Virus record (IMG/VR): IMGVR_UViG_3300032242_003291
Location: 186,001-250,000 of that record
Length of the DNA stretch: 64,000 bases
Direction: 5' to 3' (one strand)
Shown: piece after piece, positions 10,468-59,814 of the stretch
How the letters are laid out: the number at the start of each line of letters is the position of its first letter
Numbering within the stretch: the first letter of the stretch is position 1
Notes under the pieces: generated by a model
What the model was told of the DNA's origin: nothing
The model's input: the letters and a program-made list of their open reading frames with translations, nothing else
The model's database searches: none
Position numbers and translations under genes: made by a program

Positions 10468-10842
10468 TTATTCTATGGTTTTCACAGGTAATTTGAAATT
10501 ATCAGTAAACCATTTCTTGAATGGTTCGTGCCATTTATCACCAAAATATCCATCTAATTTAATGTCGTATGGATGCTCAAGTTGTACTATTGGACAAAGT
10601 TCTTTAGCTTTACTTCCATCATCAAAATATTCACAACCATACCACATAAAACATCCATCTTCATCTCCATTATAATCTCCAATATAAAATAAAATTCTAC
10701 TTTCGTCATCACCTTCTTCACCTGTTTCATCATCTATTATGTCATAGGGATTGGTCCAATTAATATCATCAACATCAAATATATCATCGAGATATGTCAT
10801 GATTACACTTTCTAATTTGGACTCTGTGATTACGTATCTCAT
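10468..10842 (-). CDS. leader-bearing WF-family protein
   Basis: MRYVITESKL; LDGYFG...FKKWFTDNFKLPVK. Confidence 0.8.
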   Translation of the reverse strand: MRYVITESKLESVIMTYLDDIFDVDDINWTNPYDIIDDETGEEGDDESRILFYIGDYNGDEDGCFMWYGCEYFDDGSKAKELCPIVQLEHPYDIKLDGYFGDKWHEPFKKWFTDNFKLPVKTIE

Positions 10843-11441
10843 TATTTATTTTGACTTTTAATCTTTTCTAATGCTTTATTAACTTTCATCCACTGTTTTT
10901 CTCTTTCGGCTCTTTCAAGGTCTTTCTTTTCTTCTCTTTTTCTCCAATTGGCAAAACTATCAGGATTCATTTTTTCTCTTGCTATACGAATCAAATCATC
11001 CTTATTTTGTAATTTTGTTTCAATATCGGCAGTTCTTTTCTTAAACCCTTGTAAATCAAAATCAGGTTCTAATTTATCTTGACGTGTTGCGTGGTGGGGT
11101 TTTCTAACTTTTGCAGGTAAATCTCTTTCTTCACCATGTAATTTTTTGAATTTAATTCCGTACTTAGCAACTCCACTCTTTCCACCAAATTTATCAAAAA
11201 TCCATTTTGTAACATCTTCTCTTAAATCCTTGTCGGAACTAAAAAACAAATTGTCCTTTAATTCATTGAACGCATCCAAAGAAACAATACCACTTGTAGG
11301 TCCTAATTGAGCCATAAGTTTACCATTAACATAAATGTTTCTATGGTCTCCCTCATGTTTAATCTCATAACCATTAAACATATCTTCTAACATAGAAGAC
11401 ATCAATTCGTTGGCTTGTTGTTCTGTTATTATAATTTTCAT
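10842..11441 (-). CDS. leader-bearing WF-family protein with charged tail
   Basis: MKIIITEQQ; VTKWIFDKFG. Confidence 0.8.
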   Translation of the reverse strand: MKIIITEQQANELMSSMLEDMFNGYEIKHEGDHRNIYVNGKLMAQLGPTSGIVSLDAFNELKDNLFFSSDKDLREDVTKWIFDKFGGKSGVAKYGIKFKKLHGEERDLPAKVRKPHHATRQDKLEPDFDLQGFKKRTADIETKLQNKDDLIRIAREKMNPDSFANWRKREEKKDLERAEREKQWMKVNKALEKIKSQNK

Positions 11442-11442
11442 A

Positions 11443-12036
11443 TTAAATCCCCCCTCTTTTTTTTCTGTTTTGACTATCTACAACATCTAAGTAAAGCTCG
11501 TCAAGGTCTGCTCCGCTTGATTTAATTCTATTTATAACCTCTTCTTTTGTATAAAGTGTATGTTTAACAATATATTCAATCATTTCTTCATCTGTAATTC
11601 CTTCAGGTTTAACAGGTTTATCAAGACAATCTTCTTCTCTTGCCAATACATCTATTTCATCCAAACCTAATCCTGATTCACCAGTAATTGCTTCAAATTT
11701 TGGTATCATTGTTTCATCATACCATTCTTCAATCACATGTAAAACATAGGAACGTCTAATACTTAATAACTTGGAAAGTTTATCAATAATTTTATGAGAT
11801 ATTGCTAAATACCCTTTTTCAAATCCATTATCCCCATAATAATAAATCGATTTAAGAGTTTCTTTACCATCAACACACCAAGTTTCACTTGAACTTACTC
11901 TATGACGAGTTTTGGCGGTTACTTTTCTTTTACCCTCACTGATATATTCATTCATATATTTGATGATGGCATTTGTAATACCTTGGCTACTTTTATTAAG
12001 TCTATTGTACTGACTTTCTGTTATGATAATTCTCAT
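11443..12036 (-). CDS. leader-bearing WF-family protein
   Basis: MRIIITESQY; VIEEWYDETM; TATTTAT at 12041-12047. Confidence 0.8.
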   Translation of the reverse strand: MRIIITESQYNRLNKSSQGITNAIIKYMNEYISEGKRKVTAKTRHRVSSSETWCVDGKETLKSIYYYGDNGFEKGYLAISHKIIDKLSKLLSIRRSYVLHVIEEWYDETMIPKFEAITGESGLGLDEIDVLAREEDCLDKPVKPEGITDEEMIEYIVKHTLYTKEEVINRIKSSGADLDELYLDVVDSQNRKKRGGI

Positions 12037-12054
12037 TATTATAAATACATCGTT

Positions 12055-12312
12055 TTATTCTTCCCAACTGATACCCAACCAATAATGTTTGTTGTGCTTT
12101 AATCCTGTATATTTTTCGATTTCTTGCGCAAGTACAGCACTTGAAAAGGTGATTTTAGGTTGTTTTCCTTCGTATATTATTTCAAATGAGGGATAGAGTC
12201 CGTCGTATGTGGAAATGGTCTCATTTTTGATTATTTTGACCTTAAAACCATAATGTATGTGTGATTGCTCAAGATATCTTGAAATTATCTTTTCAACTTG
12301 AGGTATTTCCAT
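12055..12312 (-). CDS. hypothetical protein (Y-x-G family)
   Basis: LAQEIEKYTGL. Confidence 0.7.
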   Translation of the reverse strand: MEIPQVEKIISRYLEQSHIHYGFKVKIIKNETISTYDGLYPSFEIIYEGKQPKITFSSAVLAQEIEKYTGLKHNKHYWLGISWEE

Positions 12313-12313
12313 A

Positions 12314-13033
12314 TTATACCATATTTGAACCTTTGGATACTCCTAACGAAGCATATACAGGTTCTGCAATTGATTTTGCTTGATTAGCTATTTGTTTAAC
12401 TACATTTTCGTAACCGCTACCAGCATATCTTTGATTGTTTGAATTTGTAAAGTTATTCAATAAATCAGATGCTGTTTTACCAACCAAATAATTTTTGGCA
12501 ATTAAATCAAAATAAGTTTGAATACCGTCCTCAACTGAGGAATGATATACATTCTTTCCTGTATCCACGTTCCCAACATTAAATGGATTTTTGGTTCTAA
12601 TTGGTCTTGCATTTGGATTACTTGCAAATCCACCTTCAGTTGCAAGTTGAGCCAAAGCTAATTCAACAGGAACATATTTGTTAAATTTATTGTAAGTATT
12701 TTTTGCTGCACTTGCTAACATATCACCTGTAATCCCTAATAAGTTTGATGACCTTTTAGAAATGAAATTGTCTGCAATTGTTTTATATGCATCATATCCT
12801 TGGCTTGTATTCAAATCTAATGGTGTAAATGTCCCTGAGGTAGACAATCCAGCAGCACTTGATGTTGATGGCGTAGAGTTATCTTGTTTTTTATCAAGTC
12901 CTTTTAAGAATGATGACAAATAACTTGTAAAATCGTTAGGATTTTTATTTTGACCAAGTCCACCTAACATTTGACTGGCAAATAAGTTGGCTAATTCTTG
13001 TTCAGTTAATATTACTTTGAATTTTTTACCCAT
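12314..13033 (-). CDS. leader-bearing glucosaminidase/lysozyme-like cell-wall hydrolase
   Basis: MGKKFKVILTEQEL; ALAQLATEGGF...KNPFNVG...YFDLIAKNY...RYA; start re-assigned to 13033 (TATTTAT at 13038-13044). Confidence 0.75.
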   Translation of the reverse strand: MGKKFKVILTEQELANLFASQMLGGLGQNKNPNDFTSYLSSFLKGLDKKQDNSTPSTSSAAGLSTSGTFTPLDLNTSQGYDAYKTIADNFISKRSSNLLGITGDMLASAAKNTYNKFNKYVPVELALAQLATEGGFASNPNARPIRTKNPFNVGNVDTGKNVYHSSVEDGIQTYFDLIAKNYLVGKTASDLLNNFTNSNNQRYAGSGYENVVKQIANQAKSIAEPVYASLGVSKGSNMV

Positions 13034-13048
13034 ACCAATAAATACAAC

Positions 13049-13075
13049 AAAACCCCTCATTTTGTGAGGGGTTTT
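13049..13075. terminator. intrinsic terminator (bidirectional-looking)
   Basis: aaaacccctca-tttt-gtgaggggtttt. Confidence 0.75.
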
Positions 13076-13080
13076 ATAAA

Positions 13081-13566
13081 TTATTCTGAGCCACCTAATT
13101 CATGTGCAAAAAAATCACTATGGTCATGGTCATCATCAATGATACTAACTGATGTCATTTTATCGCCAGGGACAATCTTATTGATTACATCGAGTCCTTC
13201 TGTAACAATTCCAAAACAAGTATGATTACCATCCAAATGTTGAGTGTTTTGTCTATTGATACAAACAAAAAACTGAGAACCTCCTGTGTCTCTACCTGCG
13301 TGAGCCATAGATAATACTCCTTTGTCGTGAAATTGTCTTTCACCATATACTTCGCATGGAATAGTATAACCTGGTCCACCTCTACCGTCACCGTTAGGAC
13401 ATCCTCCTTGGATTACAAAATTTGGAATAACTCTATGAAAACTTAATCCATCATAGAATTTTTCGTTAATTAGTTTGATGAAATTTTGAACTGTTTTCGG
13501 TGTTTCATTGTCATATAGTTCGGCAATCATATCACCCTTTTCTGTAGAAATTTTAACTTTAGTCAT
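13081..13566 (-). CDS. cyclophilin-type peptidyl-prolyl cis-trans isomerase
   Basis: FYDGLSFHRVIPNFVIQGG, LSMAHAGRDTGGSQFF, HLDGNHTCFG. Confidence 0.95.
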   Translation of the reverse strand: MTKVKISTEKGDMIAELYDNETPKTVQNFIKLINEKFYDGLSFHRVIPNFVIQGGCPNGDGRGGPGYTIPCEVYGERQFHDKGVLSMAHAGRDTGGSQFFVCINRQNTQHLDGNHTCFGIVTEGLDVINKIVPGDKMTSVSIIDDDHDHSDFFAHELGGSE

Positions 13567-13593
13567 ATTATACTTTTTTAGAAATATAATAAA

Positions 13594-14160
13594 CTAATAT
13601 CTACCAGTCAAATAAACCCACATAGTTTCTGGAATTCTTGTACAAGTGGTTTTGTGACCCTTATCATTTTCACAAGGGATGTTTGGTAGGGTCTTAATCA
13701 TGGCTCTCAATTCCTTAGGGGCCCCTTTTAATAATTTTAATACGTCGTTTTTGGGATAAACGTTTTCTCTATTATATTGCTCTTTGATAATATGTTCTTG
13801 TAGTTCATTATCTTCTTCATCACCATCGAAACTATATCCTGAAAAATCTAAAGAATCAATTTCCGCAATTTTCTTCAGTCCTTTAGCAACGAAGGCTTTC
13901 CTGAATGCATCTTTAGTTTGTTCATTATCAAGACCAAATAAATCTCTGATACTTCTGAATAACGAATGACCAATTAAAATATGATAACCCTCACCCTTTA
14001 CCCAATCAGCCTCAATACCATTATCGGCATCATGAGTTCCCTTTGGAAAAAAAGAAAATTCTTTATACTTCTTAAAACGAAAATCAAGATTATTCAACTT
14101 GTCTAATGCAAATTGAAAGGCTAAATTCTCTAATTGTTGTTCTTGTAATATTATTTTCAT
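13594..14160 (-). CDS. leader-bearing WF-family protein with extra C-terminal module
   Basis: MKIILQEQQL; IRDLFGLDN; internal LQE and IKE before the second module. Confidence 0.75.
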   Translation of the reverse strand: MKIILQEQQLENLAFQFALDKLNNLDFRFKKYKEFSFFPKGTHDADNGIEADWVKGEGYHILIGHSLFRSIRDLFGLDNEQTKDAFRKAFVAKGLKKIAEIDSLDFSGYSFDGDEEDNELQEHIIKEQYNRENVYPKNDVLKLLKGAPKELRAMIKTLPNIPCENDKGHKTTCTRIPETMWVYLTGRY

Positions 14161-14161
14161 A

Positions 14162-14770
14162 TTAAAATCCGTTTTCCTCCGAACATGTGATTCTATAAAT
14201 ATCAAAAAGATATTCACCAAACCAATCTTTACACATTTCAACTAAACTATCATGAATATCATCATAATCTTCACTCTCAAACAAATCCTCATCAATAGTT
14301 AAAAAATTACTAACCGCATACTCTATAACATTATCGGCATAATCAAACTCATCACCAAAATCATCACATAATGTGGGATAATTAATCTCACCGTCTGTAA
14401 TAAATTTCCTCATATTTTCTTTGTTTGCTCTTCTTCTGAACCAAAGAGGTGCGTCGGATTCATCGAGAAACTTGTGTTTTGTTTTTTCAATTTGTCTCTT
14501 AATGCTGTATTCTATTCGTTTTTCTTGTTCTTCTTTATTTAATTGAATAAAATCTTCATCTCTCATCACATAAGCCATTTTTCTTTGTTCATCGTATTCG
14601 TAATTAACATAAATAAACTCTTCCTTACGATTCACAACACTATACTTAACAAGACGTCCATTAAAATTAAAGATTCCACCTTTAACATTACGTTCAGGGT
14701 CTTTGGCATGTCTTTTACGAGACGCATTTAACAATCTTTCGTATTGGTCTTCAGTTAAGATATATTTCAT
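14162..14770 (-). CDS. leader-bearing two-module protein
   Basis: MKYILTEDQY; LDE then WFRRR module; TATTTAT at 14776-14782. Confidence 0.8.
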   Translation of the reverse strand: MKYILTEDQYERLLNASRKRHAKDPERNVKGGIFNFNGRLVKYSVVNRKEEFIYVNYEYDEQRKMAYVMRDEDFIQLNKEEQEKRIEYSIKRQIEKTKHKFLDESDAPLWFRRRANKENMRKFITDGEINYPTLCDDFGDEFDYADNVIEYAVSNFLTIDEDLFESEDYDDIHDSLVEMCKDWFGEYLFDIYRITCSEENGF

Positions 14771-14785
14771 TAAAGATAAATACCT

Positions 14786-15103
14786 TTATTTAACAAAGAC
14801 GGCTGGTCTTCTAAATTCTTTAATTCCAACTTTTGTGTTTAGAAAATTTTCAAAGTAATTTCGTATGTACATACTGATTCGTTCAGTAAAACGTTCTCTA
14901 GTATGTAAATTAGCTGAAAGTATATCATTTTCTGCTTCAGGCGTTATATCAAATTCTACCACAATATAAAGGGTATCTGACCATTCACTATAATTTATAG
15001 GTTCAATTTTTAGGTGCGTCATCCAACTTGCTTTGAGCATCGGAACAAAATGTTCCATAGCCCTTTCAAATGAATTGTGTGACCAATTTCTACTACTTGA
15101 CAT
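14786..15103 (-). CDS. hypothetical protein (Y-x-G family, divergent)
   Basis: 105 aa, coupled to the upstream gene. Confidence 0.7.
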   Translation of the reverse strand: MSSSRNWSHNSFERAMEHFVPMLKASWMTHLKIEPINYSEWSDTLYIVVEFDITPEAENDILSANLHTRERFTERISMYIRNYFENFLNTKVGIKEFRRPAVFVK

Positions 15104-15803
15104 ATTCTAATATTGTTTCGGAATAAGAAGGTGAAAAAATAATTAATGGTGTATCCCTATGGTTATTTTCGAACATACAAGTAATTAAGGGCATCATATC
15201 CTCATAAAGTTTTTCTCTAACTTTTCTTTCAATGTTAGGACTCATTAATTCAGAATGATGTGTTGGTGAAACCGTTATGTGAATCTCCAAAGGTCCATAT
15301 ATAATCGACGAACCGTACAAATTACTACCACTAGTACCACCGCTACCCAAGTGAGGTTTAATTCTTACTTCAGTGATATCCAATATCCAAACATACTTTT
15401 TCATTAAAAAATGTTTGAGTGGTAGGTGGTCCAAAACCAAAGGGTCTTTTGGTGCAGTAAGGGTTGATGTGACATCAGTTATAGTTGTACCACACCATCT
15501 ATCATAATGGTATTCAGATAATGATGACGTACCTGTTGGTACATTTCTTGTTTTTTCTTTTTTAATCTTGTATACAATCTCAGCAACCATTGGTGGCGCT
15601 GGCAGCTCCTTAGGTGTTTGAGGTATTGGTGGTGGAGGTGGTTCGGGAATATAAAAACCCCCTCCATTAATTCTTCGGGTAATATCCTCAATTCTTTCAC
15701 CATCATTATCAATATACCCATGATTTCTAGCCATATCAGGATACCCGTTAGGTAATAATGGTGGTCTACCAGTCAATCTACTTAAAAAATTTAATAAATT
15801 CAT
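15093..15803 (-). CDS. Pro-rich hypothetical early protein
   Basis: -7 element TACTTTTG at 15810-15817; PEPPPPPIP tract; start re-assigned to 15803. Confidence 0.75.
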   Translation of the reverse strand: MNLLNFLSRLTGRPPLLPNGYPDMARNHGYIDNDGERIEDITRRINGGGFYIPEPPPPPIPQTPKELPAPPMVAEIVYKIKKEKTRNVPTGTSSLSEYHYDRWCGTTITDVTSTLTAPKDPLVLDHLPLKHFLMKKYVWILDITEVRIKPHLGSGGTSGSNLYGSSIIYGPLEIHITVSPTHHSELMSPNIERKVREKLYEDMMPLITCMFENNHRDTPLIIFSPSYSETILEYVK

Positions 15804-15834
15804 ACTACGCAAAAGTAGTAAAAGTTTTGGAAAT

Positions 15835-15861
15835 AAAAAACCCCACCTTGAGAGTGGGGTT
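15835..15861 (-). terminator. intrinsic terminator
   Basis: aaaaaaccccac-loop-gtggggtt. Confidence 0.75.
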
Positions 15862-15865
15862 GATT

Positions 15866-16732
15866 TTATGATTCTACTCTTAAATAATTAAGATTATAAC
15901 CCATTCCTTTTAATAACTCTTTAATATTTTCTTTTAATGGTCTTCTAGCACTATAAGAATCATCTTTATATGAAAATTCTATAAATCCACCTAAATTTTG
16001 AGTTCCAGGAGTAAATTTAATTGCATGTATTACTCTTTTAGCATCAGGAAGCTCTTTTATTTTTTTCTTAATTACTTTATTCAAATCATTTTTGACCCAT
16101 TCATCAAGTCCAATATATTCTACACTATGAAAACTAAAAATAAGTTGTCCATGAGTTGGGTTTCCAAGTTCAACCCCTAAAAAACCTTTTATTTTGTCAG
16201 TTAAGTCTTTGGAAATTTCATTCATCTTGTATTTTCTATTATCTTCGGATTTGATAAATCTTTCCCAATCAACTTCTAGTTTAGCATAAACTTTGAATGG
16301 TGAATCTTCGGTGATAACAATTTTCATAAATTCAGGTAAATCCAATTGTTCAATAAAAAACTCTAATGGTTTTTTATATCTCTCTGTAAATTTTTCTTGT
16401 GAACGAAGTGATGGTAATTTGTGTTTTCCTAATTCCACCAGTTTTCTTCCTATATTCGATGCATTTGTTAGACTATTTCTCCATGTAACCATAACGTCTT
16501 CAGCTCTCATTCCATTATCATTACAAAAATCTGAAATATATTTTTTTACTAAATAAGATAATGGGTATTCTCCTATTTCATCACCATGATTCTTTTTAAC
16601 CCATGGTCTAAAATAATGTAAGAATACCTCAACAAAATCTTCATCATCATAAATTTCATCATTGAAAGATTCAACAATCCGATTGATAACTTTGATAAGT
16701 TCAGATTCCGTAAGGGTTAATGTTTTTTTCAT
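15866..16732 (-). CDS. leader-bearing hypothetical protein
   Basis: MKKTLTLTESELIKVINRIVES; TATTTAT at 16738-16744. Confidence 0.8.
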   Translation of the reverse strand: MKKTLTLTESELIKVINRIVESFNDEIYDDEDFVEVFLHYFRPWVKKNHGDEIGEYPLSYLVKKYISDFCNDNGMRAEDVMVTWRNSLTNASNIGRKLVELGKHKLPSLRSQEKFTERYKKPLEFFIEQLDLPEFMKIVITEDSPFKVYAKLEVDWERFIKSEDNRKYKMNEISKDLTDKIKGFLGVELGNPTHGQLIFSFHSVEYIGLDEWVKNDLNKVIKKKIKELPDAKRVIHAIKFTPGTQNLGGFIEFSYKDDSYSARRPLKENIKELLKGMGYNLNYLRVES

Positions 16733-16784
16733 CTTATATAAATACCTTTTAAATTAAAAATCCCTCGTAGTGAGGGATTTGTGG

Positions 16785-16895
16785 TTAGGATTTTAATTTC
16801 TTTAATACTTCGTGATTCTTTTTAATCAATTCGGCAGTTTTAACACCTGATTTTTGGCTTCTCATTGCCCTTGGTTTTTTAGCTCTTGTTCCCAT
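16785..16895 (-). CDS. small basic protein (36 aa)
   Basis: Not in ORF track; MGTRAKKPRAMRSQKSGVKTAELIKKNHEVLKKLKS; TATTTAT at 16909-16915, terminator at 16756-16780. Confidence 0.7.
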   Translation of the reverse strand: MGTRAKKPRAMRSQKSGVKTAELIKKNHEVLKKLKS

Positions 16896-16915
16896 ATTAT
16901 TTTAATTGATAAATA

Positions 16916-17299
16916 TTACCAACTTTGACGTTCTACGTGTTTCACAGGTAATCCCGTATGTTTTGTAAACCATCTTTTGAATAATTCTTGCCATCTTGGA
17001 CCAAAGTATCCATCAAGGGCATCATATTTTTTACTATCAATTGTAATCATAGGACATTTATGTTCAGGTAGGGGGTCCTCATTTGGGTTGTCACATAATG
17101 TATAAAACATATGTGGTTCATCACCATTACCTTCAAAATCTGGGTCAAAGAAAAAAAACATCTCATAGCTTGTATCCATTTCATCATGATAACTTTTTTT
17201 ATCTTCCCATCCTCCTCCTGGTACAAGATGACCATCAAAATATTTCAAGATTGTATCTATCAATTTATTATTTTGTTGCTCTGTTATAATGTATTTCAT
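16916..17299 (-). CDS. leader-bearing WF-family protein
   Basis: MKYIITEQQ; LDGYFG...FKRWFTKHTGLPVK; close paralog of 10468..10842. Confidence 0.8.
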   Translation of the reverse strand: MKYIITEQQNNKLIDTILKYFDGHLVPGGGWEDKKSYHDEMDTSYEMFFFFDPDFEGNGDEPHMFYTLCDNPNEDPLPEHKCPMITIDSKKYDALDGYFGPRWQELFKRWFTKHTGLPVKHVERQSW

Positions 17300-17605
17300 T
17301 TAATTATTCCAATTACTGTCACCCAACACACGAGTATTGGTTTTATCGAATACAACATTTATCCCTGTATAATCTTTAATTTTGGACCTCAATTTCATTT
17401 TAACTTGATGACTAAAGGCGGCTCTATTAATGTCATCCATACTACTCCACCACTCTTCAGGGACATAAAACACGGCATGTAATGTAAATTCACCTGGTGC
17501 CGTGTGACGTACGTCAAAGGCAACATGTTTTATTGGGTCAGGTAATATGTTTGGTAATAACTTTTCTAACGTTGATTCTACTTTGTCTTGGTCCATATTA
17601 TTCAA
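17300..17605 (-). CDS. hypothetical protein (Y-x-G family)
   Basis: LRSKIKDYTGINVVF. Confidence 0.7.
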   Translation of the reverse strand: MNNMDQDKVESTLEKLLPNILPDPIKHVAFDVRHTAPGEFTLHAVFYVPEEWWSSMDDINRAAFSHQVKMKLRSKIKDYTGINVVFDKTNTRVLGDSNWNN

Positions 17606-17912
17606 TTATTTGAAATGCAGAAATTACCATATCATCGGGGTAATGTTTATCAAACCACTTTTCCAATAGTTTTTCCGTTTCTCTTTTATCTAAACCAAAT
17701 AAGTTCATCATATGATGAAACAAATGTTCCTCAACACCCAAATGATAATCCATATAACGAAACATTGTTTTCATATCTTTATCAACAATCTCAAAATCTC
17801 CTTCTGTAGCATTGATGTGGTCTAAATCAACTTTTTTAAGTTCTCCGACAGTATCTTTAAGATATTTGTCAACGAAATCCACCAATCTATTTTCTGTTAT
17901 TAGATACTTCAT
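17598..17912 (-). CDS. leader-bearing WF-family protein
   Basis: MKYLITENRL; MNLFG...LEKWFDKHY; start re-assigned. Confidence 0.8.
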   Translation of the reverse strand: MKYLITENRLVDFVDKYLKDTVGELKKVDLDHINATEGDFEIVDKDMKTMFRYMDYHLGVEEHLFHHMMNLFGLDKRETEKLLEKWFDKHYPDDMVISAFQIIE

Positions 17913-17916
17913 TTTA

Positions 17917-18180
17917 TTATACTGCTGGGTCTTTATCGATAAATACAATAAAAATATCAATTCCCATATAGTTCATTATGTCACTTTTAATCTTCTCACG
18001 TATTTTAGTTTCATATTCTGACCTCAAATAATTTTCGGTTAATATAACAATAGTTAATTCTCCATGAGCTTCACCTAATATTAGTCTTGAAACTTTTGAT
18101 ATATTCTGACCTTTAATCACATCTATTATGTATGGTTCAAGTTTTTTATATTTTGATAAATCAGATTTTATTTTCATCAA
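17917..18180 (-). CDS. hypothetical protein (Y-x-G family)
   Basis: IKSDIMNYMGIDIFIVF. Confidence 0.7.
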   Translation of the reverse strand: MMKIKSDLSKYKKLEPYIIDVIKGQNISKVSRLILGEAHGELTIVILTENYLRSEYETKIREKIKSDIMNYMGIDIFIVFIDKDPAV

Positions 18181-18476
18181 TCTACTTTTTTCACTTCAAC
18201 ACCAAATTTATATTCAAAAAACTTTCCAACAAATACACTTGTCTCAATATAGCTTTTACCAAATAAATCCATTAAAGTTTTTCTAAACTCTTTTAGAAAC
18301 CACAATCTACCATCCTCACCGTCATATTCCATTTCAACTTCATTGTTCGCTTCTCCGTTACGATTTTCAAGGACAATAAATCTATCGAATTCAATAATTT
18401 CCTTAGCGTCAATCCACGAATTTATATAATCCGCCATTAACATATCTATCTTACTTTCTTTAATAATATATTTCAT
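18177..18476 (-). CDS. leader-bearing WF-family protein
   Basis: MKYIIKESKI; MDLFG...FFEYKFGVEVK. Confidence 0.8.
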   Translation of the reverse strand: MKYIIKESKIDMLMADYINSWIDAKEIIEFDRFIVLENRNGEANNEVEMEYDGEDGRLWFLKEFRKTLMDLFGKSYIETSVFVGKFFEYKFGVEVKKVD

Positions 18477-18478
18477 AG

Positions 18479-18832
18479 TTACATTCTGTCTACTGTTGTA
18501 CAATTTTCACCTGTAAAGTTATTATACCATTCTAAAAATAATGTACCAATGTGATTAAAATTAAAACCAAAAAGTCTTGAGACCGTATCCCACATTATTG
18601 GCCTTACTAAAAGCATTCTACCTTCTTCAGTTTCATCTTCCTCATCGTCATCAAAATTATAGGCTTCAAACATGGCATCAGATGGATGTTCATTTTTTCC
18701 TCGAACATATAATCTTGTCATATCTTCATATTCGTATCCTTCATCGGAAACCTCCCAATCATAAGAATCAAGATAATTAAAGACCATCTTCTTCATTTTT
18801 TCGTACTGAGATTCTGTTATAATGATTTTCAT
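18479..18832 (-). CDS. leader-bearing WF-family protein
   Basis: MKIIITESQY; SRLFG...FLEWYNNF. Confidence 0.8.
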   Translation of the reverse strand: MKIIITESQYEKMKKMVFNYLDSYDWEVSDEGYEYEDMTRLYVRGKNEHPSDAMFEAYNFDDDEEDETEEGRMLLVRPIMWDTVSRLFGFNFNHIGTLFLEWYNNFTGENCTTVDRM

Positions 18833-20047: not shown

Positions 20048-20083
20048 ACAAATAAATATCCACAAAAATAAAAATGAAAAAAA

Positions 20084-20555: not shown

Positions 20556-20929
20556 TATTCTACAAGATAATTTGTTATTCTTCCATCTCTATAAGGTATT
20601 AATGTATTATACCGATTATAATCTCCATTTGCTATCACAATACAATTAGGATATAGTTTTTTATTTGTTTTATTTTTCCATATGTTAAGGCAAAAATCCA
20701 TAAACTCATTATGAGCATCAGTATATGCCATTAACTTAGCAATATCTACATCACAAGAAAGTTCACCATTATCATATATGCGAACATAACTATTATTTTC
20801 GATAAATAAATTTCTTTTTGATGGATAAAAAAGTATAGACCCAATATAATTCTTACCTATAAAAACAACAGGTGGACAATCAATCTTAACCGTCCAATAA
20901 TCGAAAAATTTATCGTACATTGTTTTCAT
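20555..20929 (-). CDS. hypothetical protein
   Basis: 124 aa, operonic. Confidence 0.7.
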   Translation of the reverse strand: MKTMYDKFFDYWTVKIDCPPVVFIGKNYIGSILFYPSKRNLFIENNSYVRIYDNGELSCDVDIAKLMAYTDAHNEFMDFCLNIWKNKTNKKLYPNCIVIANGDYNRYNTLIPYRDGRITNYLVE

Positions 20930-21143
20930 TTATTTTATGAATAGCATTGTGCCGTTTAATCATTAAATCGGGTATAAACATAATATAATAATCAAATGCT
21001 TCAGTTGTTAAATCTTTCCATGGACCCCACACTTTAGTACGTATTCCCATAATTCGGTCCTTAAGGTTACCCATATCAACTTCATATTTTTTCATGTAGG
21101 ATTCACCAAAATAATCATCAACCTCAAATATTAAATCTTTCAT
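20910..21143 (-). CDS. hypothetical protein
   Basis: 77 aa, operonic. Confidence 0.65.
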   Translation of the reverse strand: MKDLIFEVDDYFGESYMKKYEVDMGNLKDRIMGIRTKVWGPWKDLTTEAFDYYIMFIPDLMIKRHNAIHKINENNVR

Positions 21144-21146
21144 ACA

Positions 21147-21956: not shown

Positions 21957-21985
21957 AACACAAAGATACAAAAATATTTTGATAT

Positions 21986-22011
21986 AAAAAACCCACCTTA
22001 AGGGTGGGATT
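21986..22011 (-). terminator. intrinsic terminator
   Basis: aaaaacccacc-ttaag-ggtggg. Confidence 0.75.
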
Positions 22012-22285
22012 ATATTTTATCTACTGCTTTTGTAAACTTGTGACATTTTTCGGATACACCTCCTTCTTCATGGTCAGTAATGGATAATTTTACATTATCA
22101 TAATGAACGGTCATATCAGGATGGTGATTTTGTTTATCTGCAATTTTCATTACCGAATTAACAAATGGCATAACCTCTTTATAGTCTTTGAAATAGAATG
22201 TTTTAATAAGTTTATTACCACTTTCTTTCCAATCACTTTTATTCATAATTGTTCTTTTTTGTTGTTCTGTGATAATATATTTCAT
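22010..22285 (-). CDS. pterin-4-alpha-carbinolamine dehydratase (PhhB-like) with N-terminal leader
   Basis: W..SGNKLIKTFYFKDY..VMPFVN.V...ADKQNHHPD...ITDH..GGVSE; MKYIITEQQ leader. Confidence 0.85.
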   Translation of the reverse strand: MKYIITEQQKRTIMNKSDWKESGNKLIKTFYFKDYKEVMPFVNSVMKIADKQNHHPDMTVHYDNVKLSITDHEEGGVSEKCHKFTKAVDKI

Positions 22286-22297
22286 AATGAGACTACT

Positions 22298-22780
22298 TTA
22301 CCAAGTTCTACATGCCCAATAACGTGGCTTCCATCTTGGTCCAGGATTATCACAATTCATTCTCGCTCTAAAGTTTCTTCTACGTTCGGGATTATTCTTT
22401 TTAATTGTCATTCTTTTACCGTGAGCAGATTTTCCACCAAACCCAAAGTTAACCTTAACAACCTTACCCTTATCATTTTTAACATATACCTTGGACTTCT
22501 TCACATCACCTTGCATAATCTTTCCAAGTTGAACTTTACGTCCTTGATATTCAGCCTCATTTATGGAACCTTCTTCAAATTCTGTTTCTTCAACTGAACC
22601 ATACTCATCTTCATATAAAGTTTCATTTTTAGGCTTTATACCTTTTTTCTTCATGTTGATGGCAATTGCTGCTTGTTGTGCAGGACTTGATGCTTCGTCC
22701 ATTTCATTTTCAGATTCTTTAAGAACACGTTTAACCAATTTCATCAAATCGGATTCTGTAAGTCTAACTATCTTTGGCAT
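22298..22780 (-). CDS. leader-bearing multi-module protein
   Basis: MPKIVRLTESDLMKLVKRVLKES; modules after MDE and INE; C-terminal RARMNCDNPG...YWACRTW; TATTTAT at 22796-22802. Confidence 0.8.
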   Translation of the reverse strand: MPKIVRLTESDLMKLVKRVLKESENEMDEASSPAQQAAIAINMKKKGIKPKNETLYEDEYGSVEETEFEEGSINEAEYQGRKVQLGKIMQGDVKKSKVYVKNDKGKVVKVNFGFGGKSAHGKRMTIKKNNPERRRNFRARMNCDNPGPRWKPRYWACRTW

Positions 22781-22813
22781 AATAAATGTTTTATTATAAA
22801 TACATACGGAAAT

Positions 22814-22837
22814 AAAAAACCCACCATAAAGGTGGGT
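22814..22837 (-). terminator. intrinsic terminator, near-identical to 24325-24349
   Basis: aaaaaacccaccataaaggtggg. Confidence 0.75.
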
Positions 22838-22846
22838 CAATATTTA

Positions 22847-24286
22847 CTATTGTTCTAACAAATTAAGTTGTGATTTCAAATACTCTGATTGTTTTGCAAT
22901 TTTCTTTAAAAATTCTTGATAATATTTTTTATTATACTGATAAAGTCCATTTAGATGTTGGGAACCTTTGTTTCCCAATAATTCAAGACTTTCTTTTGAT
23001 AATGAATTTTTACCTGAGGCATATCCAATTAAATTATCCAATTCTTGTTTAGCACCTTTAGCTCCGACTTTTTGAACTAAACCATTAATTTCGCTTGTCA
23101 TATTATTTAAAATCATCTGATTATTTGCAACTATTTCTTGTGGATGATAAAGATATTGTTGATATAAATCTTTATACTTTTCACCAGCATTTATTGCGTT
23201 ATCAATACCTTGACCTGTTTCAGACGCTTTAGCATATGCTGATTTATAGTTAGATAATTCAGTTTGTTTAGCGTTTTGAATGGCTTCATAAGAATTATTC
23301 AATTTTGGACTAACCAAAGATGGGTCCTTGATGTGAGTTGCTTCATGATTTAAAACTTGTCTTATTTCTTCTTCACTCTTACCTGCCAATGCGTCCAAGT
23401 TCATATAAATTTTATTTCTACCAACAGCTTCACCAGCAAAAGTTTCGCCAGGAAAACTTTTAACAATCACATCAACTTCTTTTGTAGTACCATTAACAAT
23501 CAAATCCAATTTTAAAAAACGTTGTTCCCCTTGTTTAATTATTGGGACCAATTGTGAAATTTGATTTAATTCTGATTCTGCAAATTTAATTCCTCCTTGA
23601 ACTGCCATTCTGGCCAACTTATATGTATTGCCTGACGCGGACTTCAAATTATTTAAAAATCCTTCTTTGGTTATTTTATTTGAAAGAAATTGTTGGAGTA
23701 ATTCATTATATTTTTGTTGTCCAAATTTTGAAATAAAATTTGGTTTTAATGATTCGACACTATTAACAATGGGAGTAAGTTTTGTTGACGCACTTTCTAA
23801 ACCTTGTTTGACTAAGACCTCATTTTCTTTAATAGCATTCAAAGCAGTTGCTTCCGCAGGAGAGAAAATTTTCACACCTTTAGCAATTTTGCTTCCCAAT
23901 GCTGCCATTGCCTTTGAACCTAATTGTTTTACACCAGGAATCTCACCAATGAAAGGTAACAAAGAAAAGGCTGCGGTTATACCCGCAGCTTTTGTATCTC
24001 CTTCATTGTAATAAATTGCTGAATCAGCCAATCCAATACCCGCAGAAATAAATGGACCTACAGCAGGAATAAAGGCCGTACCGATGGCGAGAAATCCCAT
24101 AAGTGTATGTACATCAAATGGTACCCCTTTGCCGTTTGTTGGGTCAATTGTTCCTGATTTAACATTTGTTGTTGGCTGAAGAAAATTTGATGGTGCTGAT
24201 GGTGTAAGAGTTGCGGCAGGTTTGACTCCCTTAACTTGTTCAGATAAGACTCTATTAAATTGTGATTCTGTGACAATAATTTTCAT
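22847..24286 (-). CDS. leader-bearing polymorphic-toxin-like protein with hydrophobic pre-toxin segment and HExxH motif
   Basis: MKIIVTESQF..VLSEQ; AIGTAFIPAVGP...EGD...AAFSLLPFIG; LNHEATHI; TATTTAT at 24292-24298. Confidence 0.6.
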   Translation of the reverse strand: MKIIVTESQFNRVLSEQVKGVKPAATLTPSAPSNFLQPTTNVKSGTIDPTNGKGVPFDVHTLMGFLAIGTAFIPAVGPFISAGIGLADSAIYYNEGDTKAAGITAAFSLLPFIGEIPGVKQLGSKAMAALGSKIAKGVKIFSPAEATALNAIKENEVLVKQGLESASTKLTPIVNSVESLKPNFISKFGQQKYNELLQQFLSNKITKEGFLNNLKSASGNTYKLARMAVQGGIKFAESELNQISQLVPIIKQGEQRFLKLDLIVNGTTKEVDVIVKSFPGETFAGEAVGRNKIYMNLDALAGKSEEEIRQVLNHEATHIKDPSLVSPKLNNSYEAIQNAKQTELSNYKSAYAKASETGQGIDNAINAGEKYKDLYQQYLYHPQEIVANNQMILNNMTSEINGLVQKVGAKGAKQELDNLIGYASGKNSLSKESLELLGNKGSQHLNGLYQYNKKYYQEFLKKIAKQSEYLKSQLNLLEQ

Positions 24287-24349: not shown

Positions 24350-24372
24350 CTTAATATAGAATTATGTTTTAT

Positions 24373-31274: not shown

Positions 31275-31736
31275 TTAGAATTGACTAGTTGCACCTGTTG
31301 CACCCCCACCATATTGTGTTTGGTTAGGAGCTCCTCCAGTTGCTTTGTTTGGGTATAATTTATTTTTTAATTGAAGTGCATATGCAATTGCGTTTTGAGA
31401 TGCTTTTTGTGAATTAGGTGAAACATTAAAAGATTTCACACCTTTATTACCTTGATAAAAAACTTCTAGAGTCCATGGATTTCTTGATGGGTCATCTCCA
31501 CAATTTAAAAATACGTTAATACCTGTACTGTGGTTGTTGAAATACATATACTTACAACAAGCATATGGACATTTTTTCCATGTTGTTGCTTTGGACTCAT
31601 CAACCAATTTGAATCCCTCTTTAGTTAATTGAGGTACGATTAATTTATTCCAATAATCGAAATCTTCTTGCTCTTTAATTACTCTATTCACCAAACGAAC
31701 CAAATCGTTTTCTGTTAATCTTATTATTTTACTCAT
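31275..31736 (-). CDS. leader-bearing hypothetical protein
   Basis: MSKIIRLTENDLVRLVNRVIKEQ; TATTTAT at 31752-31758. Confidence 0.8.
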   Translation of the reverse strand: MSKIIRLTENDLVRLVNRVIKEQEDFDYWNKLIVPQLTKEGFKLVDESKATTWKKCPYACCKYMYFNNHSTGINVFLNCGDDPSRNPWTLEVFYQGNKGVKSFNVSPNSQKASQNAIAYALQLKNKLYPNKATGGAPNQTQYGGGATGATSQF

Positions 31737-34862: not shown

Positions 34863-35183
34863 ATGAAGATAATCATCACAGAAGAACAATACGACAAAAT
34901 CATTAGTCAGAAATCTCTTTTTTGGATTAAGAGAAGAATTGATTTGGTTAAAGACGGATTGAAAGAAACCTTTGAACTTATGGAGTATGATATTTGTCGA
35001 ATCGATGATTATTATAAGTTTGAAAAGAAATTCTTCTCTGTATTAATGGATGGTCTTCATCCATATTTTTATGATGATGAAAGTTTTGACCACGCAGAAT
35101 ATGATGCTATGTATAATACATTAAAGGATTTATACTATGTTGAGTGTACCGAGTTTTATTTTGACGGTAGAGAACGCTGCTAA
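34863..35183 (+). CDS. leader-bearing WxKRR-module protein
   Basis: MKIIITEEQY; FWIKRR; TATTTAT at 34852-34858. Confidence 0.8.
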   Translation: MKIIITEEQYDKIISQKSLFWIKRRIDLVKDGLKETFELMEYDICRIDDYYKFEKKFFSVLMDGLHPYFYDDESFDHAEYDAMYNTLKDLYYVECTEFYFDGRERC

Positions 35184-58045: not shown

Positions 58046-59449
58046 TTTAGATTCTTTTTCTTCTTCAATCTTTTCTTTTAGTTTTGTTTTGAATTCGTTG
58101 GCTATCATCTTTGTAAATTTAACATAAGGGTGGTCTTCGCTCTCAGGATTATAACGATAAGAACCTTGAGGTGGTCTTGTACCTCTACCCAAATAACTTA
58201 ATCCTCCAATGTTTGTGATACATTTATGCCCACCTGAATTAGATTGAATTAAATCCCATGCATTTACCAAGATACTGTCTAAAATGTTTTTTTCTCTATC
58301 AGTCAAATCTTTGAATGGTTTCTCCATCATCTCCCTAATCTTATCTAAAGCTTCCTCCCCTTTTGGAATACCTATGAATTTACCACCATATATCGCATCA
58401 AAATCTTGGAACGTATACCCAATACTTTCAGGACCAACACTAGTCTCGCTAATCCATTTAATTGTAGATAATGGTATTTTCTTGTCTTTGAGTTGACCTT
58501 CCCATTTTGATAATACTTCTTGTGCTATCTCACCTAAATTTACGCCTTTAAGTCCTCGGTCTTTTTTGAAGGGATTACAAGATGCTTGAACTAATCCCAT
58601 GGGCCAAGCCATAATCAAAAAATCGGATTCAGGATTATTTCTGAATGGTGTGTATCTATCATAAGAACCTGGTTTGAACATACTACCACCACCATATTGA
58701 TAAATTATATTATCACTAACCTGAGGAAAATCCTTCATTTGTTGTGCATAATCATCTGCATTTGATTGTAATTCTTCAGGACCTACTGAATTGGTCTTTT
58801 TCATCCACTCTTTGATGTTTCCTAATATTGAAAGTAATGATGGTTCCGAATCCATAACCAATCCTTCCAAAAAACCTGGCTTATTTTTGAATGCTAAAAT
58901 TAATTTGTTAATGACCAAACCTAACAACATTTTATTTTTTTGTAATGATTTGTCTTTATCGAATCTGTATATATAATTTACGACTTCATCAGGAGTAATA
59001 TTGTGTTTAATAAAATCCGCAGAGTCTACAGTATTAATTAACAAAACATCTGATGTTGGAAACAAATCTTTTGTTGATACTACTTGAGATATCGTTTCGA
59101 CATTTGAACGTGCACCTCTAAATTGTTTTGATGTTCCCTTTTCAACCCCTACTTGTGTGTCATGATGGTCAGTATGAATTTTGAACATTGGTTTACCGTG
59201 AGCAAAATCTACAAGGACAGGCATTGTATCACCTGTTGCATCATTTTTTTTAACTGAAAACTCCTTGTCACCATATTGAATTACATGAGCCCCAACAACA
59301 TCAATACCATTATCTTCAAGATATTTTTTCATTGCAATTGCTGTTGTAACACCATCTAAGTCCTGATGAAAATAAATTTCGGCTTTGGGATATCTTTTCC
59401 TCAAAGCCGAAATATCTCTTATACCGCTTTCGTTAATTAATTTTTTCAT
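58037..59449 (-). CDS. DHH-family phosphoesterase-like protein with short leader
   Basis: MKKLINE-SG; YFHQDLDG, VDFAH, HTDHH, INTVDSAD, SGGH. Confidence 0.75.
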   Translation of the reverse strand: MKKLINESGIRDISALRKRYPKAEIYFHQDLDGVTTAIAMKKYLEDNGIDVVGAHVIQYGDKEFSVKKNDATGDTMPVLVDFAHGKPMFKIHTDHHDTQVGVEKGTSKQFRGARSNVETISQVVSTKDLFPTSDVLLINTVDSADFIKHNITPDEVVNYIYRFDKDKSLQKNKMLLGLVINKLILAFKNKPGFLEGLVMDSEPSLLSILGNIKEWMKKTNSVGPEELQSNADDYAQQMKDFPQVSDNIIYQYGGGSMFKPGSYDRYTPFRNNPESDFLIMAWPMGLVQASCNPFKKDRGLKGVNLGEIAQEVLSKWEGQLKDKKIPLSTIKWISETSVGPESIGYTFQDFDAIYGGKFIGIPKGEEALDKIREMMEKPFKDLTDREKNILDSILVNAWDLIQSNSGGHKCITNIGGLSYLGRGTRPPQGSYRYNPESEDHPYVKFTKMIANEFKTKLKEKIEEEKESKLK

Positions 59450-59814
59450 TAAAGTCCAATCCAATTTAGGAATCTATCCATTAAACCTCCTTCATCTGCA
59501 ACAAGGTCTTGTAATTGTTTTCTGTCTTGTGGTGGCATTTTACTCCAAGTTTCTTCACCCCACACTCCATCAGGTCTTCTACAACCAATACTTGATTGAT
59601 ATCTCGATATTGCTTGTGATGTTTGTGATGTTTGATTGATGTCCGTTTTACCGTCAACAGTCAGTGGTTGTCTATTATCACCTGTAATTTTTTTATTATT
59701 CAAGAATCTTTGAATTGCTCTAATGAATTGTCTATCCATGTTTTGTTCTGAAATAACTCTTTTAACAAGATTAGTTAAATCGTTTTCTGTAAGTCTTATT
59801 ATTTTTTTTGCCAT
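59449..59814 (-). CDS. leader-bearing peptidoglycan-binding domain protein
   Basis: MAKKIIRLTENDLTNLVKRVISEQ; IRAIQRFLN...LTVDG...AISRYQ...PDGVWGEETW. Confidence 0.8.
   Translation of the reverse strand: MAKKIIRLTENDLTNLVKRVISEQNMDRQFIRAIQRFLNNKKITGDNRQPLTVDGKTDINQTSQTSQAISRYQSSIGCRRPDGVWGEETWSKMPPQDRKQLQDLVADEGGLMDRFLNWIGL

What the first reader, a model, noticed from the sequence alone, without database searches (positions are those of the whole stretch)
22010..22285. A metabolic enzyme (PhhB-like) carrying the putative packaging leader
Seen: an intact pterin-carbinolamine dehydratase signature with its N-terminus replaced by MKYIITEQQ. Known: PCD folds also act as protein-binding cofactors (DCoH). 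Inference: a captured host gene re-addressed into the virion, showing the leader can be grafted onto new cargo.
Basis: partly seen in the sequence, partly recalled or inferred. Interest (0 to 1): 0.6.

Follow-up and report, generated by a model that had tools for sequence, protein, structure and literature searches.

The report
Phage pterin dehydratase with shared N-terminal tag
A freshwater T4-like jumbo phage carries a small, apparently intact pterin-recycling enzyme. Its first nine residues match an N-terminal tag found on about twenty unrelated proteins of the same phage; whether the tag sends proteins into the virion is untested, and it was probably not simply grafted on.

Summary
The ORF at 22010-22285 (-) is real. 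It encodes a 91-aa pterin-4a-carbinolamine dehydratase (Pfam E 9e-20) with the HHP and His catalytic residues and a confident PCD/DCoH model.

Its start, MKYIITEQQ, is identical to that of the unrelated ORF 16916-17299. It fits a protein-level N-terminal module, MK[IY]I[IVL]TE.Q[YFL]..[LI], plus an RLTESDL..VKRVIKE variant. About 21 mostly unrelated ORFs of this 317-kb T4-like phage carry it, as do 20-30 ORFs in each of two complete relatives and at least 99 ORFs in IMG/VR.

The tag core I/L-T-E fits the L/I-x-E specificity of the gp21-type prohead protease that the genome encodes. A T4 CTS-like packaging or processing tag is therefore plausible, but nothing here tests it.

"Replaced" is only partly supported. 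The protein has no extra length, and the segment sits where the canonical PCD N-terminal helix lies. The sister cellular PCDs (Cytophagales) begin ME-I-T-x-x-Q..EL, sharing the I-T-x-x-Q..L skeleton. On tag positions 3-13 the phage PCD scores 18.0 bits, against 11.9 or less for about 70 cellular PCDs and 19-31 for true tags. Residues 1-9 are more conserved than most of the fold.

Verdict: real enzyme and real tag family; virion addressing and grafting unproven.

The parts
22010..22285 (-). CDS of the 91-aa pterin-4a-carbinolamine dehydratase (PCD/DCoH fold), stop codon included
   Evidence: ORF list; Pfam PF01329 E 9e-20; PDB sequence hits 1uso, 1ru0, 4c45, 2ebb; AF2 model and Foldseek
22247..22285 (-). 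Codons 1-13 (MKYIITEQQKRTI): the segment that matches the clade-wide N-terminal tag; I5-T6-E7 is a candidate L/I-x-E protease site
   Evidence: residues 1-9 have mean entropy 0.58 bits in 104 relatives, with I5, E7 and Q9 invariant
22070..22126 (-). Codons 54-72, from H54-H55-P56 to D71-H72: catalytic block of PCD
   Evidence: alignment to DCoH2/PCBD2; invariant columns; lowest-entropy block, 0.38 bits
21992..22008 (-). Intrinsic terminator-like hairpin plus T-run directly after the PCD stop codon
   Evidence: sequence read
22298..22780 (-). Upstream gene, probably co-transcribed: 160 aa with the type-B tag (MPKIVRLTESDLMKLVKRVLKE); C-terminal domain matches phrog_7595; stop lies 12 nt before the PCD ATG
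   Evidence: the same neighbour (ending ..WACRTW) sits upstream of PCD in relative L119
22796..22802 (-). TATTTAT box, 15 nt before the ATG at 22780; promoter-like motif shared with head genes and many tag genes
22818..22838 (-). Terminator-like hairpin that closes the preceding unit and bounds the two-gene unit holding PCD
16916..17299 (-). 127-aa ORF of unknown function that starts with the identical nine residues MKYIITEQQ
22847..24286 (-). 479-aa type-A tag protein (MKIIVTESQFNRVLSE) with an HExxH motif
10468..18832 (-). Array holding 11 of the tag-bearing ORFs. Starts at 10842, 11441, 12036, 13033, 14160, 14770, 16327, 17299, 17912, 18476 and 18832
   Evidence: the bodies after residue 26 are mostly unrelated by blastp
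31275..31736 (-). 153-aa type-B tag protein (MSKIIRLTENDLVRLVNRVIKE)
34863..35183 (+). 106-aa type-A tag protein (MKIIITEEQYDKII)
59449..59814 (-). 121-aa type-B tag protein with a PG_binding_1 domain

Best explanation
The ORF encodes a probably active pterin-4a-carbinolamine dehydratase. It is an accessory gene of a clade of freshwater T4-like jumbo phages (about 270-320 kb, host probably Bacteroidota), descended from a cellular, Bacteroidota-type PCD.

Its first 9-13 residues function as a member of a clade-wide, protein-level N-terminal tag (hydrophobic strand, then T-E-x-Q/D helix start). The tag marks about 20-35 otherwise unrelated proteins per genome. The most likely role of the tag is addressing to, and/or processing in, the assembling head. 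Its invariant core I/L-T-E is a site for the gp21-type prohead protease, as with the capsid targeting sequences of T4 internal proteins. On that reading, PCD would be made with a tagged partner from one transcription unit, loaded into proheads and possibly delivered with the DNA.

The tag on PCD most likely arose by remodelling the native N-terminal helix, which already had I-T-x-x-Q..L, and not by addition of a foreign leader.

Shown: the enzyme family and fold, the tag family and its statistics, the T4-like head genes, and the phylogenetic placement. Inferred: that the tag is functional on PCD, that it is a packaging or cleavage signal, and the route by which it arose.
For: Enzyme: Pfam 71 bits; catalytic His residues aligned and invariant; model pLDDT 86 and rmsd 1.2 A to 1usm/1ru0.

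Tag family: about 21 ORFs in the genome; synonymous codon variation; bodies mostly unrelated. At least 99 further ORFs in IMG/VR show strong conservation at positions the search pattern left free: Y/F/L at position 10 in 73 of 99, L/I at position 13 in 91 of 99. Two complete relatives have about 20-30 tag genes each.

PCD as a member: 8th of 1946 starts. On positions 3-13 it scores 18.0 bits, against 19.2-30.8 for left-out true tags and 11.9 or less for about 70 cellular PCDs. Residues 1-9 have entropy 0.58 bits, against 1.39 for residues 10-18 and 0.72-0.85 for core blocks, and only position 8 is free, as in the tag consensus.

Head link: Peptidase_S77 and Gp23 in the genome. S77 is present in 4 of 4 tag-bearing relatives that are at least 90% complete. 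gp21 cleaves after L/I-X-E and a 10-residue CTS loads diverse proteins into T4 heads (PMC9026906 and PMC3012670). The MCP N-terminus has ..L-I-N-E-A... One tag gene sits inside the structural module. A TATTTAT box precedes the scaffold, protease and portal genes and many tag genes. In relatives L080/L081 PCD lies 1.5 kb from Gp23, S77 and portal.

In-situ origin: collinearity with Pfam positions 5 onward; Cytophagales sister PCDs start ME-I-T-x-x-Q.
Against: There is no proteomic, transcript or cleavage datum. The complex prediction with the protease gave no answer.

Tag conservation continues past the putative cleavage site (Q9, Y10, L13), unlike the T4 CTS, so the tag may be a docking helix or something else. 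PCD lacks the aromatic residue at position 10 and has no linker between tag and fold.

I, T, Q and L are shared with cellular sister PCDs, so part of the match and part of the conservation may be native PCD structure. Enrichment of the TATTTAT box at tag genes is weak: 7 of 15 against 85 of 379, p 0.054. The box precedes 22% of all genes, so it is not shown to be 'late'.

PCD is absent from two complete relatives, so it is dispensable. A packaged pterin enzyme has no obvious use, and the genome has no pterin-pathway partner.
Confidence: 0.4

Rival explanations
1. The resemblance is mostly inherited or coincidental. The phage PCD keeps a native PCD N-terminal helix (I-T-x-x-Q..L, the usual L-S/T-x-x-E/Q-I start of the family). 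AT-rich start-codon-proximal bias (MK, I, Y) then pushed it toward the tag consensus. The protein is an ordinary cytoplasmic auxiliary metabolic enzyme (pterin recycling or a Moco-related COG2154 role) and is not packaged.
For: The Pfam match starts at residue 7 and there is no extra length. The best cellular windows reach 11.9 and 11.1 bits (Spirosomataceae ME-I-T-K-S-Q-I-E-E-L; Nitrospinaceae K-I-A-L-T-E-Q-M-L). The Cytophagales clade is sister to the phage clade with 100/97 support, and its N-terminus is itself conserved. PCD lacks Y/F at position 10. Another phage record (MT835479.1) carries a PCD with a canonical L-T-P-E-Q-I start.
Against: Nine of nine residues are identical to a paralogous tag, and K2, I4 and E7 are not in the cellular sisters. 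The score exceeds that of all roughly 70 cellular PCDs by 6 bits or more. Residues 1-9 are more conserved than most of the fold in 104 relatives, with the same free position 8 as the tag. In the model residues 1-10 have pLDDT 55 and do not superpose on native long-form N-termini: rmsd rises to 8-9.5 A when they are included.
Confidence: 0.3
2. The tag is real and functional on PCD, but it is not a capsid-targeting signal. It would serve another shared purpose for about 20-35 phage proteins. One option is a docking helix for a common partner such as a chaperone, membrane or assembly factor. Another is a nascent-peptide or 5'-coding feature that favours translation of mRNAs with very short leaders in a host without Shine-Dalgarno use.
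For: Conservation extends through positions 9-16, beyond any I/L-T-E site. The TATTTAT box often ends only 5-8 nt before the ATG, implying very short 5' UTRs. The phage encodes its own ribosomal protein S21. Cargo includes a GH24 lysozyme with LysM, PG_binding_1 and glucosaminidase-like proteins, which need not be in the head. An internal copy of the motif exists in ORF 40584-41672.
Against: Codons vary synonymously, so the constraint is on the peptide. The tag is not hydrophobic enough for a Sec, Tat or lipoprotein signal (sequence). The co-occurrence with the S77 protease and the exact I/L-x-E fit would be left unexplained.
Confidence: 0.25
3. PCD acts here as a DCoH-like protein-binding cofactor and not as cargo. 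Its beta-sheet saddle would bind helical N-terminal tags of other phage proteins, as DCoH binds the N-terminal helical dimerisation domain of HNF-1.
For: The fold matches DCoH, including the HNF-1 complex entry 1f93. The tags are predicted N-terminal helices (for PCD's own). PCD is co-transcribed with a tagged protein.
Against: No test was done. The catalytic residues are strictly conserved, which argues for enzymatic use. PCD is absent from complete relatives that keep 20-30 tagged genes, so it cannot be a general tag receptor.
Confidence: 0.03

Closest known systems
Capsid targeting sequences (CTS) of T4 internal proteins IPI/II/III and Alt, removed by prohead protease gp21
   Same: A short N-terminal peptide starting MK, shared by otherwise unrelated and variable small proteins of a T4-like phage. 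It ends in an I/L-x-E motif, and a gp21-family protease is encoded in the genome. Several of the genes form arrays with their own promoter-like boxes (PMC9026906, PMC3012670).
   Different: There is no experimental link to the head. The consensus sequence is different. Conservation runs past the putative cleavage site. There are three sub-types (A, B with RLTESDL, C with ITEEEK) and far more members, 20-35 per genome. On PCD the tag is part of the domain's own N-terminal helix and not a detachable prefix.
Bacterial PCD / PhhB (COG2154, Pfam PF01329)
   Same: Same family, length, catalytic HHP and His residues and fold. The closest cellular relatives are Bacteroidota at 38-58% identity.
   Different: It is encoded by a phage, with no phenylalanine hydroxylase or other pterin gene in the genome. 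Its N-terminus conforms to the phage tag.
DCoH/PCBD1-2 and PCD-like Rubisco assembly factors (RAF2, acRAF 4low)
   Same: Same fold, with precedents for non-enzymatic, protein-binding use of the fold (PMC5859369 listed).
   Different: Those with pure chaperone roles have lost catalytic residues, which this protein keeps. No partner is known here.
Propeptides of phiKZ/SPN3US-type giant phage head and ejection proteins
   Same: Many head-internal proteins are processed after Glu by a diverged gp21 homologue (PMC9026906).
   Different: Those sites are S/A-x-E with no conserved N-terminal tag sequence. The phage lineage is different.

Membership tests
Pterin-4a-carbinolamine dehydratase / DCoH (PF01329, COG2154) | Profile match above the curated threshold over the whole domain | tested here: met
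   71 bits against a cut-off of 26, residues 7-90 on profile positions 5-90 of 91; also found by genome search
Pterin-4a-carbinolamine dehydratase / DCoH (PF01329, COG2154) | Catalytic histidines: the HHP motif plus the downstream His (His61/62/79 in the mammalian enzyme; numbering from my own knowledge) | tested here: met
   H54-H55-P56 and H72 align with the HHP and H of 1ru0/4wil; invariant in 26 relatives
Pterin-4a-carbinolamine dehydratase / DCoH (PF01329, COG2154) | beta-beta-alpha-beta-beta-alpha fold | tested here: met
   AF2 elements E20-22, E25-32, H35-52, E57-60, E64-69, H79-89, pLDDT 86; Foldseek probability 1.00 and rmsd 1.2 A to 1usm, 1ru0 and 4c45
Pterin-4a-carbinolamine dehydratase / DCoH (PF01329, COG2154) | Dehydratase activity on 4a-hydroxytetrahydropterin | not testable with these tools
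   needs an enzyme assay or PhhA-dependent complementation
PhhB in the strict sense (partner of phenylalanine hydroxylase PhhA) | An aromatic amino-acid hydroxylase in the same genome or operon | tested here: not met
   no Biopterin_H match in the 317-kb genome; FolE, PTPS and DUF2237 also absent
T4-type capsid targeting sequence / gp21-processed propeptide | The same short N-terminal peptide on several otherwise unrelated proteins of one T4-like phage | tested here: met
   about 21 ORFs; bodies mostly unrelated; Gp23 and S77 present
T4-type capsid targeting sequence / gp21-processed propeptide | A gp21-family prohead protease encoded by the phage | tested here: met
   Peptidase_S77 at 78 bits; present in 4 of 4 near-complete tag-bearing relatives
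T4-type capsid targeting sequence / gp21-processed propeptide | The peptide ends at an L/I-x-E cleavage motif | tested here: met
   I5-T6-E7 in PCD and I/L-T-E in all sub-types; motif taken from PMC9026906. Only the sequence fit is shown, not cleavage
T4-type capsid targeting sequence / gp21-processed propeptide | Sequence similarity to the T4 IPIII CTS itself | not tested
   The T4 sequence was not fetched. From memory only the MK start and the I-x-E end are shared
T4-type capsid targeting sequence / gp21-processed propeptide | Tag-dependent encapsidation and removal of the tag in the prohead | not testable with these tools
   No virion proteome, and no RNA runs hold the locus. The complex prediction gave no answer
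DCoH-type protein-binding cofactor | A helical partner domain bound on the sheet surface of the PCD dimer | not tested
   No partner was tested. PCD is absent from tag-rich relatives

The most novel reading that the evidence does not exclude
The MK-I-I-I-T-E-x-Q / R-L-T-E-S-D-L module is a portable capsid-targeting and protease-processing signal. It would define a 20-35 member, fast-turning-over 'injected proteome' in a widespread clade of uncultured freshwater T4-like jumbo phages. PCD would then be a metabolic enzyme converted into injected cargo by reshaping its own N-terminal helix into the signal. That would make it a natural example of how new cargo is recruited.
Probability: 0.25. Interest if true: 0.75.

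Novelty: new variant of a known kind. Interest (0 to 1): 0.5.

Why it matters
If the tag is an addressing signal, one short motif would read out the whole set of proteins these abundant uncultured phages load into their heads and inject. That set includes lysozymes, a zincin-like protein, small Zn-ribbon-like proteins and a pterin enzyme. It would also generalise the T4 CTS principle far beyond the T-even phages and offer a new natural tag for loading cargo into phage heads.

For PCD itself, the gene gives a rare view of how an enzyme's own terminal helix might be converted into such a signal. Even if the packaging idea is wrong, an unreported N-terminal module on 5-10% of the genes of a phage clade needs an explanation.

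Tried and rejected
1. Complex prediction of the prohead protease (alignment A2) with PCD (A1) scored 0.00 and gave no verdict. It counts neither for nor against binding.

2. A DNA-level repeat as the cause of the shared start was rejected. Upstream regions differ and the codons vary synonymously.

3. The tag genes being one paralogous family was rejected at blastp level. Only 2 of 210 pairs match beyond residue 26.

4. tblastn aligned PCD residues 1-13 with 'LEYITLEEL' of the Chitinophagaceae fusions, which would suggest a shared native N-terminus. This was rejected because that stretch is the tail of the DUF2237 domain: DUF2237 covers residues 9-121 and Pterin_4a starts at 119.

5. A search for pterin-pathway partners in the genome (Biopterin_H, GTP cyclohydrolase I, PTPS, DUF2237) found none.

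6. Enrichment of the TATTTAT box at tag genes is weak (p 0.054) and is not used as evidence of late expression.

7. GenBank phages gave no close relative. blastn gave only a 109-nt pelagiphage match in the neighbouring gene. tblastn of PCD gave one distant hit. The type-B tag protein and the tag peptide gave no match.

8. Literature searches for the motif strings and for phage PCD found nothing relevant.

9. Sequencing runs were all DNA from freshwater or aquatic metagenomes, with no RNA holder.

10. The cellular comparison therefore rests on a pattern-seeded scan of GTDB species genomes and could miss closer cellular PCDs.

Full report
**What is at the coordinates.** The window is bases 186001-250000 of a 317,259-bp IMG/VR virus record with 33% G+C, rated complete. 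On the minus strand, 22010-22285 is an ATG-started ORF of 91 codons plus stop. It matches Pfam Pterin_4a at 71 bits (cut-off 26, E 9e-20), residues 7-90 on profile positions 5-90 of 91. By sequence it finds solved PCD/DCoH proteins: 1uso/1usm, 1ru0, 4wil, 4c45 and 2ebb. H54-H55-P56 and H72 align with the catalytic HHP and His. An AlphaFold2 model built on 26 relatives has pLDDT 86 and shows beta-beta-alpha-beta-beta-alpha preceded by a short helix at residues 7-12. Residues 1-10 have pLDDT of only 55. Foldseek places the core on PCD/DCoH structures at rmsd 1.2 A over 74 columns. The overlapping 164-aa plus-strand ORF 22103-22597 was not searched against any family and is taken as spurious.

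**The N-terminus and the tag family.** The protein starts MKYIITEQQ. The same nine residues start the unrelated 127-aa ORF 16916-17299, with three synonymous codon differences. Across the genome about 21 ORFs start with one of two related forms:
- Type A is MK[IY]I[IVL]TE.Q[YF]..[LIM], with looser variants.
- Type B is K-[IV]-[IV]-R-L-T-E-[SN]-D-L..L-V-K-R-V-[IL]-K-E.

Thirteen of the 21 lie between window positions 10.5 and 24.3 kb, including the two genes directly upstream of PCD. Codons vary synonymously and the upstream DNA differs, so the constraint is on the peptide. After residue 26 the proteins are mostly unrelated by blastp. A matrix built from seven type-A tags, without PCD, ranks the PCD start 8th of 1946 ATG starts: 25 bits against a background mean of -8.9, sd 5.8.

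**The tag is a hallmark of a phage clade.**
- In 99 ORFs read from the hits, positions the pattern left free are strongly conserved: Y/F/L at position 10 in 73 of 99, and L/I at position 13 in 91 of 99.
- The proteins behind the tag range from 40 to over 500 aa. They include a GH24 lysozyme with LysM, a DHH-like protein and an L5 gp82-like protein.
- By size and CheckV completeness, the 30 tag-bearing records that were checked all look like pieces of genomes of roughly 270-350 kb. All four that are at least 90% complete encode Peptidase_S77.
- Two complete relatives (268.7 and 296.3 kb) have about 20-30 tagged ORFs each. These include a third sub-type, K-x-F-[IL]-I-T-E-E-E-K..I-L-G.
- No paper in the searchable library contains the motif strings.

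**Genome context.** The genome has a T4-type head module:
- large terminase and portal;
- a phage-encoded ribosomal protein S21;
- Peptidase_S77 (the gp21 prohead protease family);
- an acidic 537-aa scaffold-like protein;
- a Gp23-family major capsid protein.

The closest cultured capsid proteins are only about 42% identical: Flavobacterium phage immuto and Microcystis phage Mel-JY01. The locus occurs in freshwater and aquatic metagenomes from several studies.

T4 gp21 cleaves after L/I-X-E, and the first ten residues of IPIII (the CTS) suffice to load diverse proteins into the prohead core (PMC9026906 and PMC3012670). The invariant core of all three tag sub-types is I/L-T-E. The capsid protein here has ..L-I-N-E-A.. 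in its N-terminal part, where (from memory) T4 gp23 is cut at L-T-E/A. One type-B gene sits inside the structural module. A TATTTAT box precedes the scaffold, protease and portal genes and other head-region genes, as well as many tag genes. However, it precedes 22% of all genes, and its enrichment at tag genes is weak at p 0.054.

**Transcription unit.** On the minus strand the order is as follows:
1. hairpin and T-run at 22838-22818;
2. TATTTAT box at 22802-22796;
3. the 160-aa type-B gene at 22780-22298;
4. 12 nt of spacer;
5. PCD at 22285-22010;
6. hairpin and T-run at 22008-21992.

PCD is thus probably co-transcribed with a tagged partner. In relative L119 the same partner precedes PCD, but a terminator and a TATTTAT box lie between them. 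In L077 PCD also has its own box. In L080/L081 PCD lies 1.5 kb from Gp23, S77 and portal.

**Was the N-terminus replaced?** The word search found 164 relatives, and the 120 listed are 65-100% identical. Most of them start M[KR][IY]IITE.Q (106 of the 120 by pattern match). The exceptions are mostly alternative start calls or truncated ORFs.

A scan of one genome per prokaryotic species found 72 cellular PCD loci. The nearest are Chitinophagaceae proteins at 50-58% identity. In these, PCD is the C-terminal domain after DUF2237, which covers residues 9-121, with Pterin_4a starting at residue 119. The apparent match of their 'LEYITLEEL' to the phage start therefore lies in DUF2237 and is coincidental.

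The next nearest are stand-alone Cytophagales PCDs at 38-46% identity, which start ME-I-T-K-S-Q-I-E-E-L..D-W. In the tree, the Cytophagales are sister to a clade of phage plus Chitinophagaceae fusions, with 100/97 support. The fusion clade nests inside the phage sequences with 99/94 support, although phage monophyly is not rejected (p-AU 0.084).

With one single-residue indel, the phage start aligns with the Cytophagales start at I5, T6, Q9, I13/L, K16, D18 and W19. K2, [IY]3, I4 and E7 are new in the phage. On tag positions 3-13 the scores are as follows:

| Sequence set | Score (bits) |
|---|---|
| Phage PCD | 18.0 |
| Left-out true tags | 19.2-30.8 |
| About 70 cellular PCDs | 11.9 or less |

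Within 104 phage PCDs the block entropies are:

| Block | Mean entropy (bits) |
|---|---|
| Residues 1-9 | 0.58 |
| Residues 10-18 | 1.39 |
| Core blocks | 0.72-0.85 |
| Catalytic block | 0.38 |

I5, E7 and Q9 are invariant and only position 8 is free, exactly as in the tag consensus.

My reading is that the segment is under tag-like selection. It stands where the native helix stood and shares that helix's skeleton, so remodelling in place is more likely than a graft. By contrast, in the tagged lysozyme the Pfam domain starts only at residue 67, so there the tag is a true prefix.

**What the enzyme might do.** The genome has no aromatic amino-acid hydroxylase, GTP cyclohydrolase I, PTPS or DUF2237. 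PCD is also absent from two complete relatives. It is therefore an accessory gene acting on host pterins, or else a moonlighting PCD fold. One other phage record carries a PCD, with a canonical L-T-P-E-Q-I start.

**Assessment.** My estimates are:

| Claim | Probability |
|---|---|
| The ORF is a PCD | about 0.97 |
| The tag family is real and acts at protein level | about 0.95 |
| The PCD start functions as a tag | about 0.6 |
| The tag is a head-targeting or gp21-processed signal | about 0.35-0.4 |
| The tag reached PCD by a graft | about 0.25 |

The complex prediction of protease with PCD returned no verdict and is not used as evidence.

Noticed in passing
L005-L014 (Chitinophagaceae / Sediminibacterium MAG contigs): In these freshwater Bacteroidota, PCD is the C-terminal domain of a DUF2237-PCD fusion. 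In the tree this fusion clade nests inside the phage PCD clade, next to P0048 (99/94). This hints at phage-to-host transfer followed by fusion. Phage monophyly is not rejected (p-AU 0.084).
   Followed up: partly
window 40584-41672 (-), motif near 40988: An internal copy of the tag (..K-K-K-Y-I-V-T-E-S-Q-Y-N-L-I-L-E..) lies about 228 residues into a 362-aa ORF. It is either a fusion of an upstream gene with a tagged gene or evidence that the module is not strictly N-terminal.
   Followed up: no
window 22796-22802 and upstream of starts 12036, 13033, 14770, 24286, 31736 and 34863; L082 upstream of the scaffold, protease and portal genes: A (G)TATTTAT box lies 5-25 nt before many ATGs, within 45 nt upstream of 22% of genes. 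It often ends only 5-8 nt before the ATG, which would give very short or no 5' UTRs. There is no obvious Shine-Dalgarno sequence.
   Followed up: partly
L082 13686-13871 (+) = G000 107686-107871; also L080 16404-16595: A ribosomal protein S21 gene sits inside the head module, between the protease region and the portal gene, and is conserved in relatives.
   Followed up: no
window 21992-22008, 22818-22838 and 24327-24352 (-): The terminator hairpins between tag genes are near-copies of one another (..CCCACC-loop-GGTGGG plus a T-run), so each small gene or gene pair forms a stand-alone cassette.
   Followed up: no
window 18896-20065 (-): A 389-aa ORF whose C-terminal half is extremely glycine-rich (GGGG runs), next to the tag-gene array. 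It has no family assignment.
   Followed up: no
L082 6306-6986 (-) = G000 100306-100986: A 226-aa protein near the capsid gene ends with ..E-Q-L-T-D-I-I-R-R-V-I-R-E-N, which resembles the type-B tag but at the C-terminus.
   Followed up: no
window 22298-22552 (-): The C-terminal domain of the PCD partner (phrog_7595, ending ..RYWACRTW) is the only part of the 6-kb stretch searched (window 20000-26000) with nucleotide similarity to GenBank phages: 74% over 109 nt to Pelagibacter phages Aegir and Kolga.
   Followed up: no
L020 (4.7-kb contig binned as Rhodospirillales): A PCD relative at 43% identity has lost the HHP motif (..K-Y-R-Y-Q-P-T..) and lacks the tag (start M-V-K-S-S-L-Q-T-K). It is a possibly degenerate, non-catalytic offshoot.
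   Followed up: no
window 56893-56965 (-): A tRNA-Met (CAT) gene, the only tRNA in the window.
   Followed up: no
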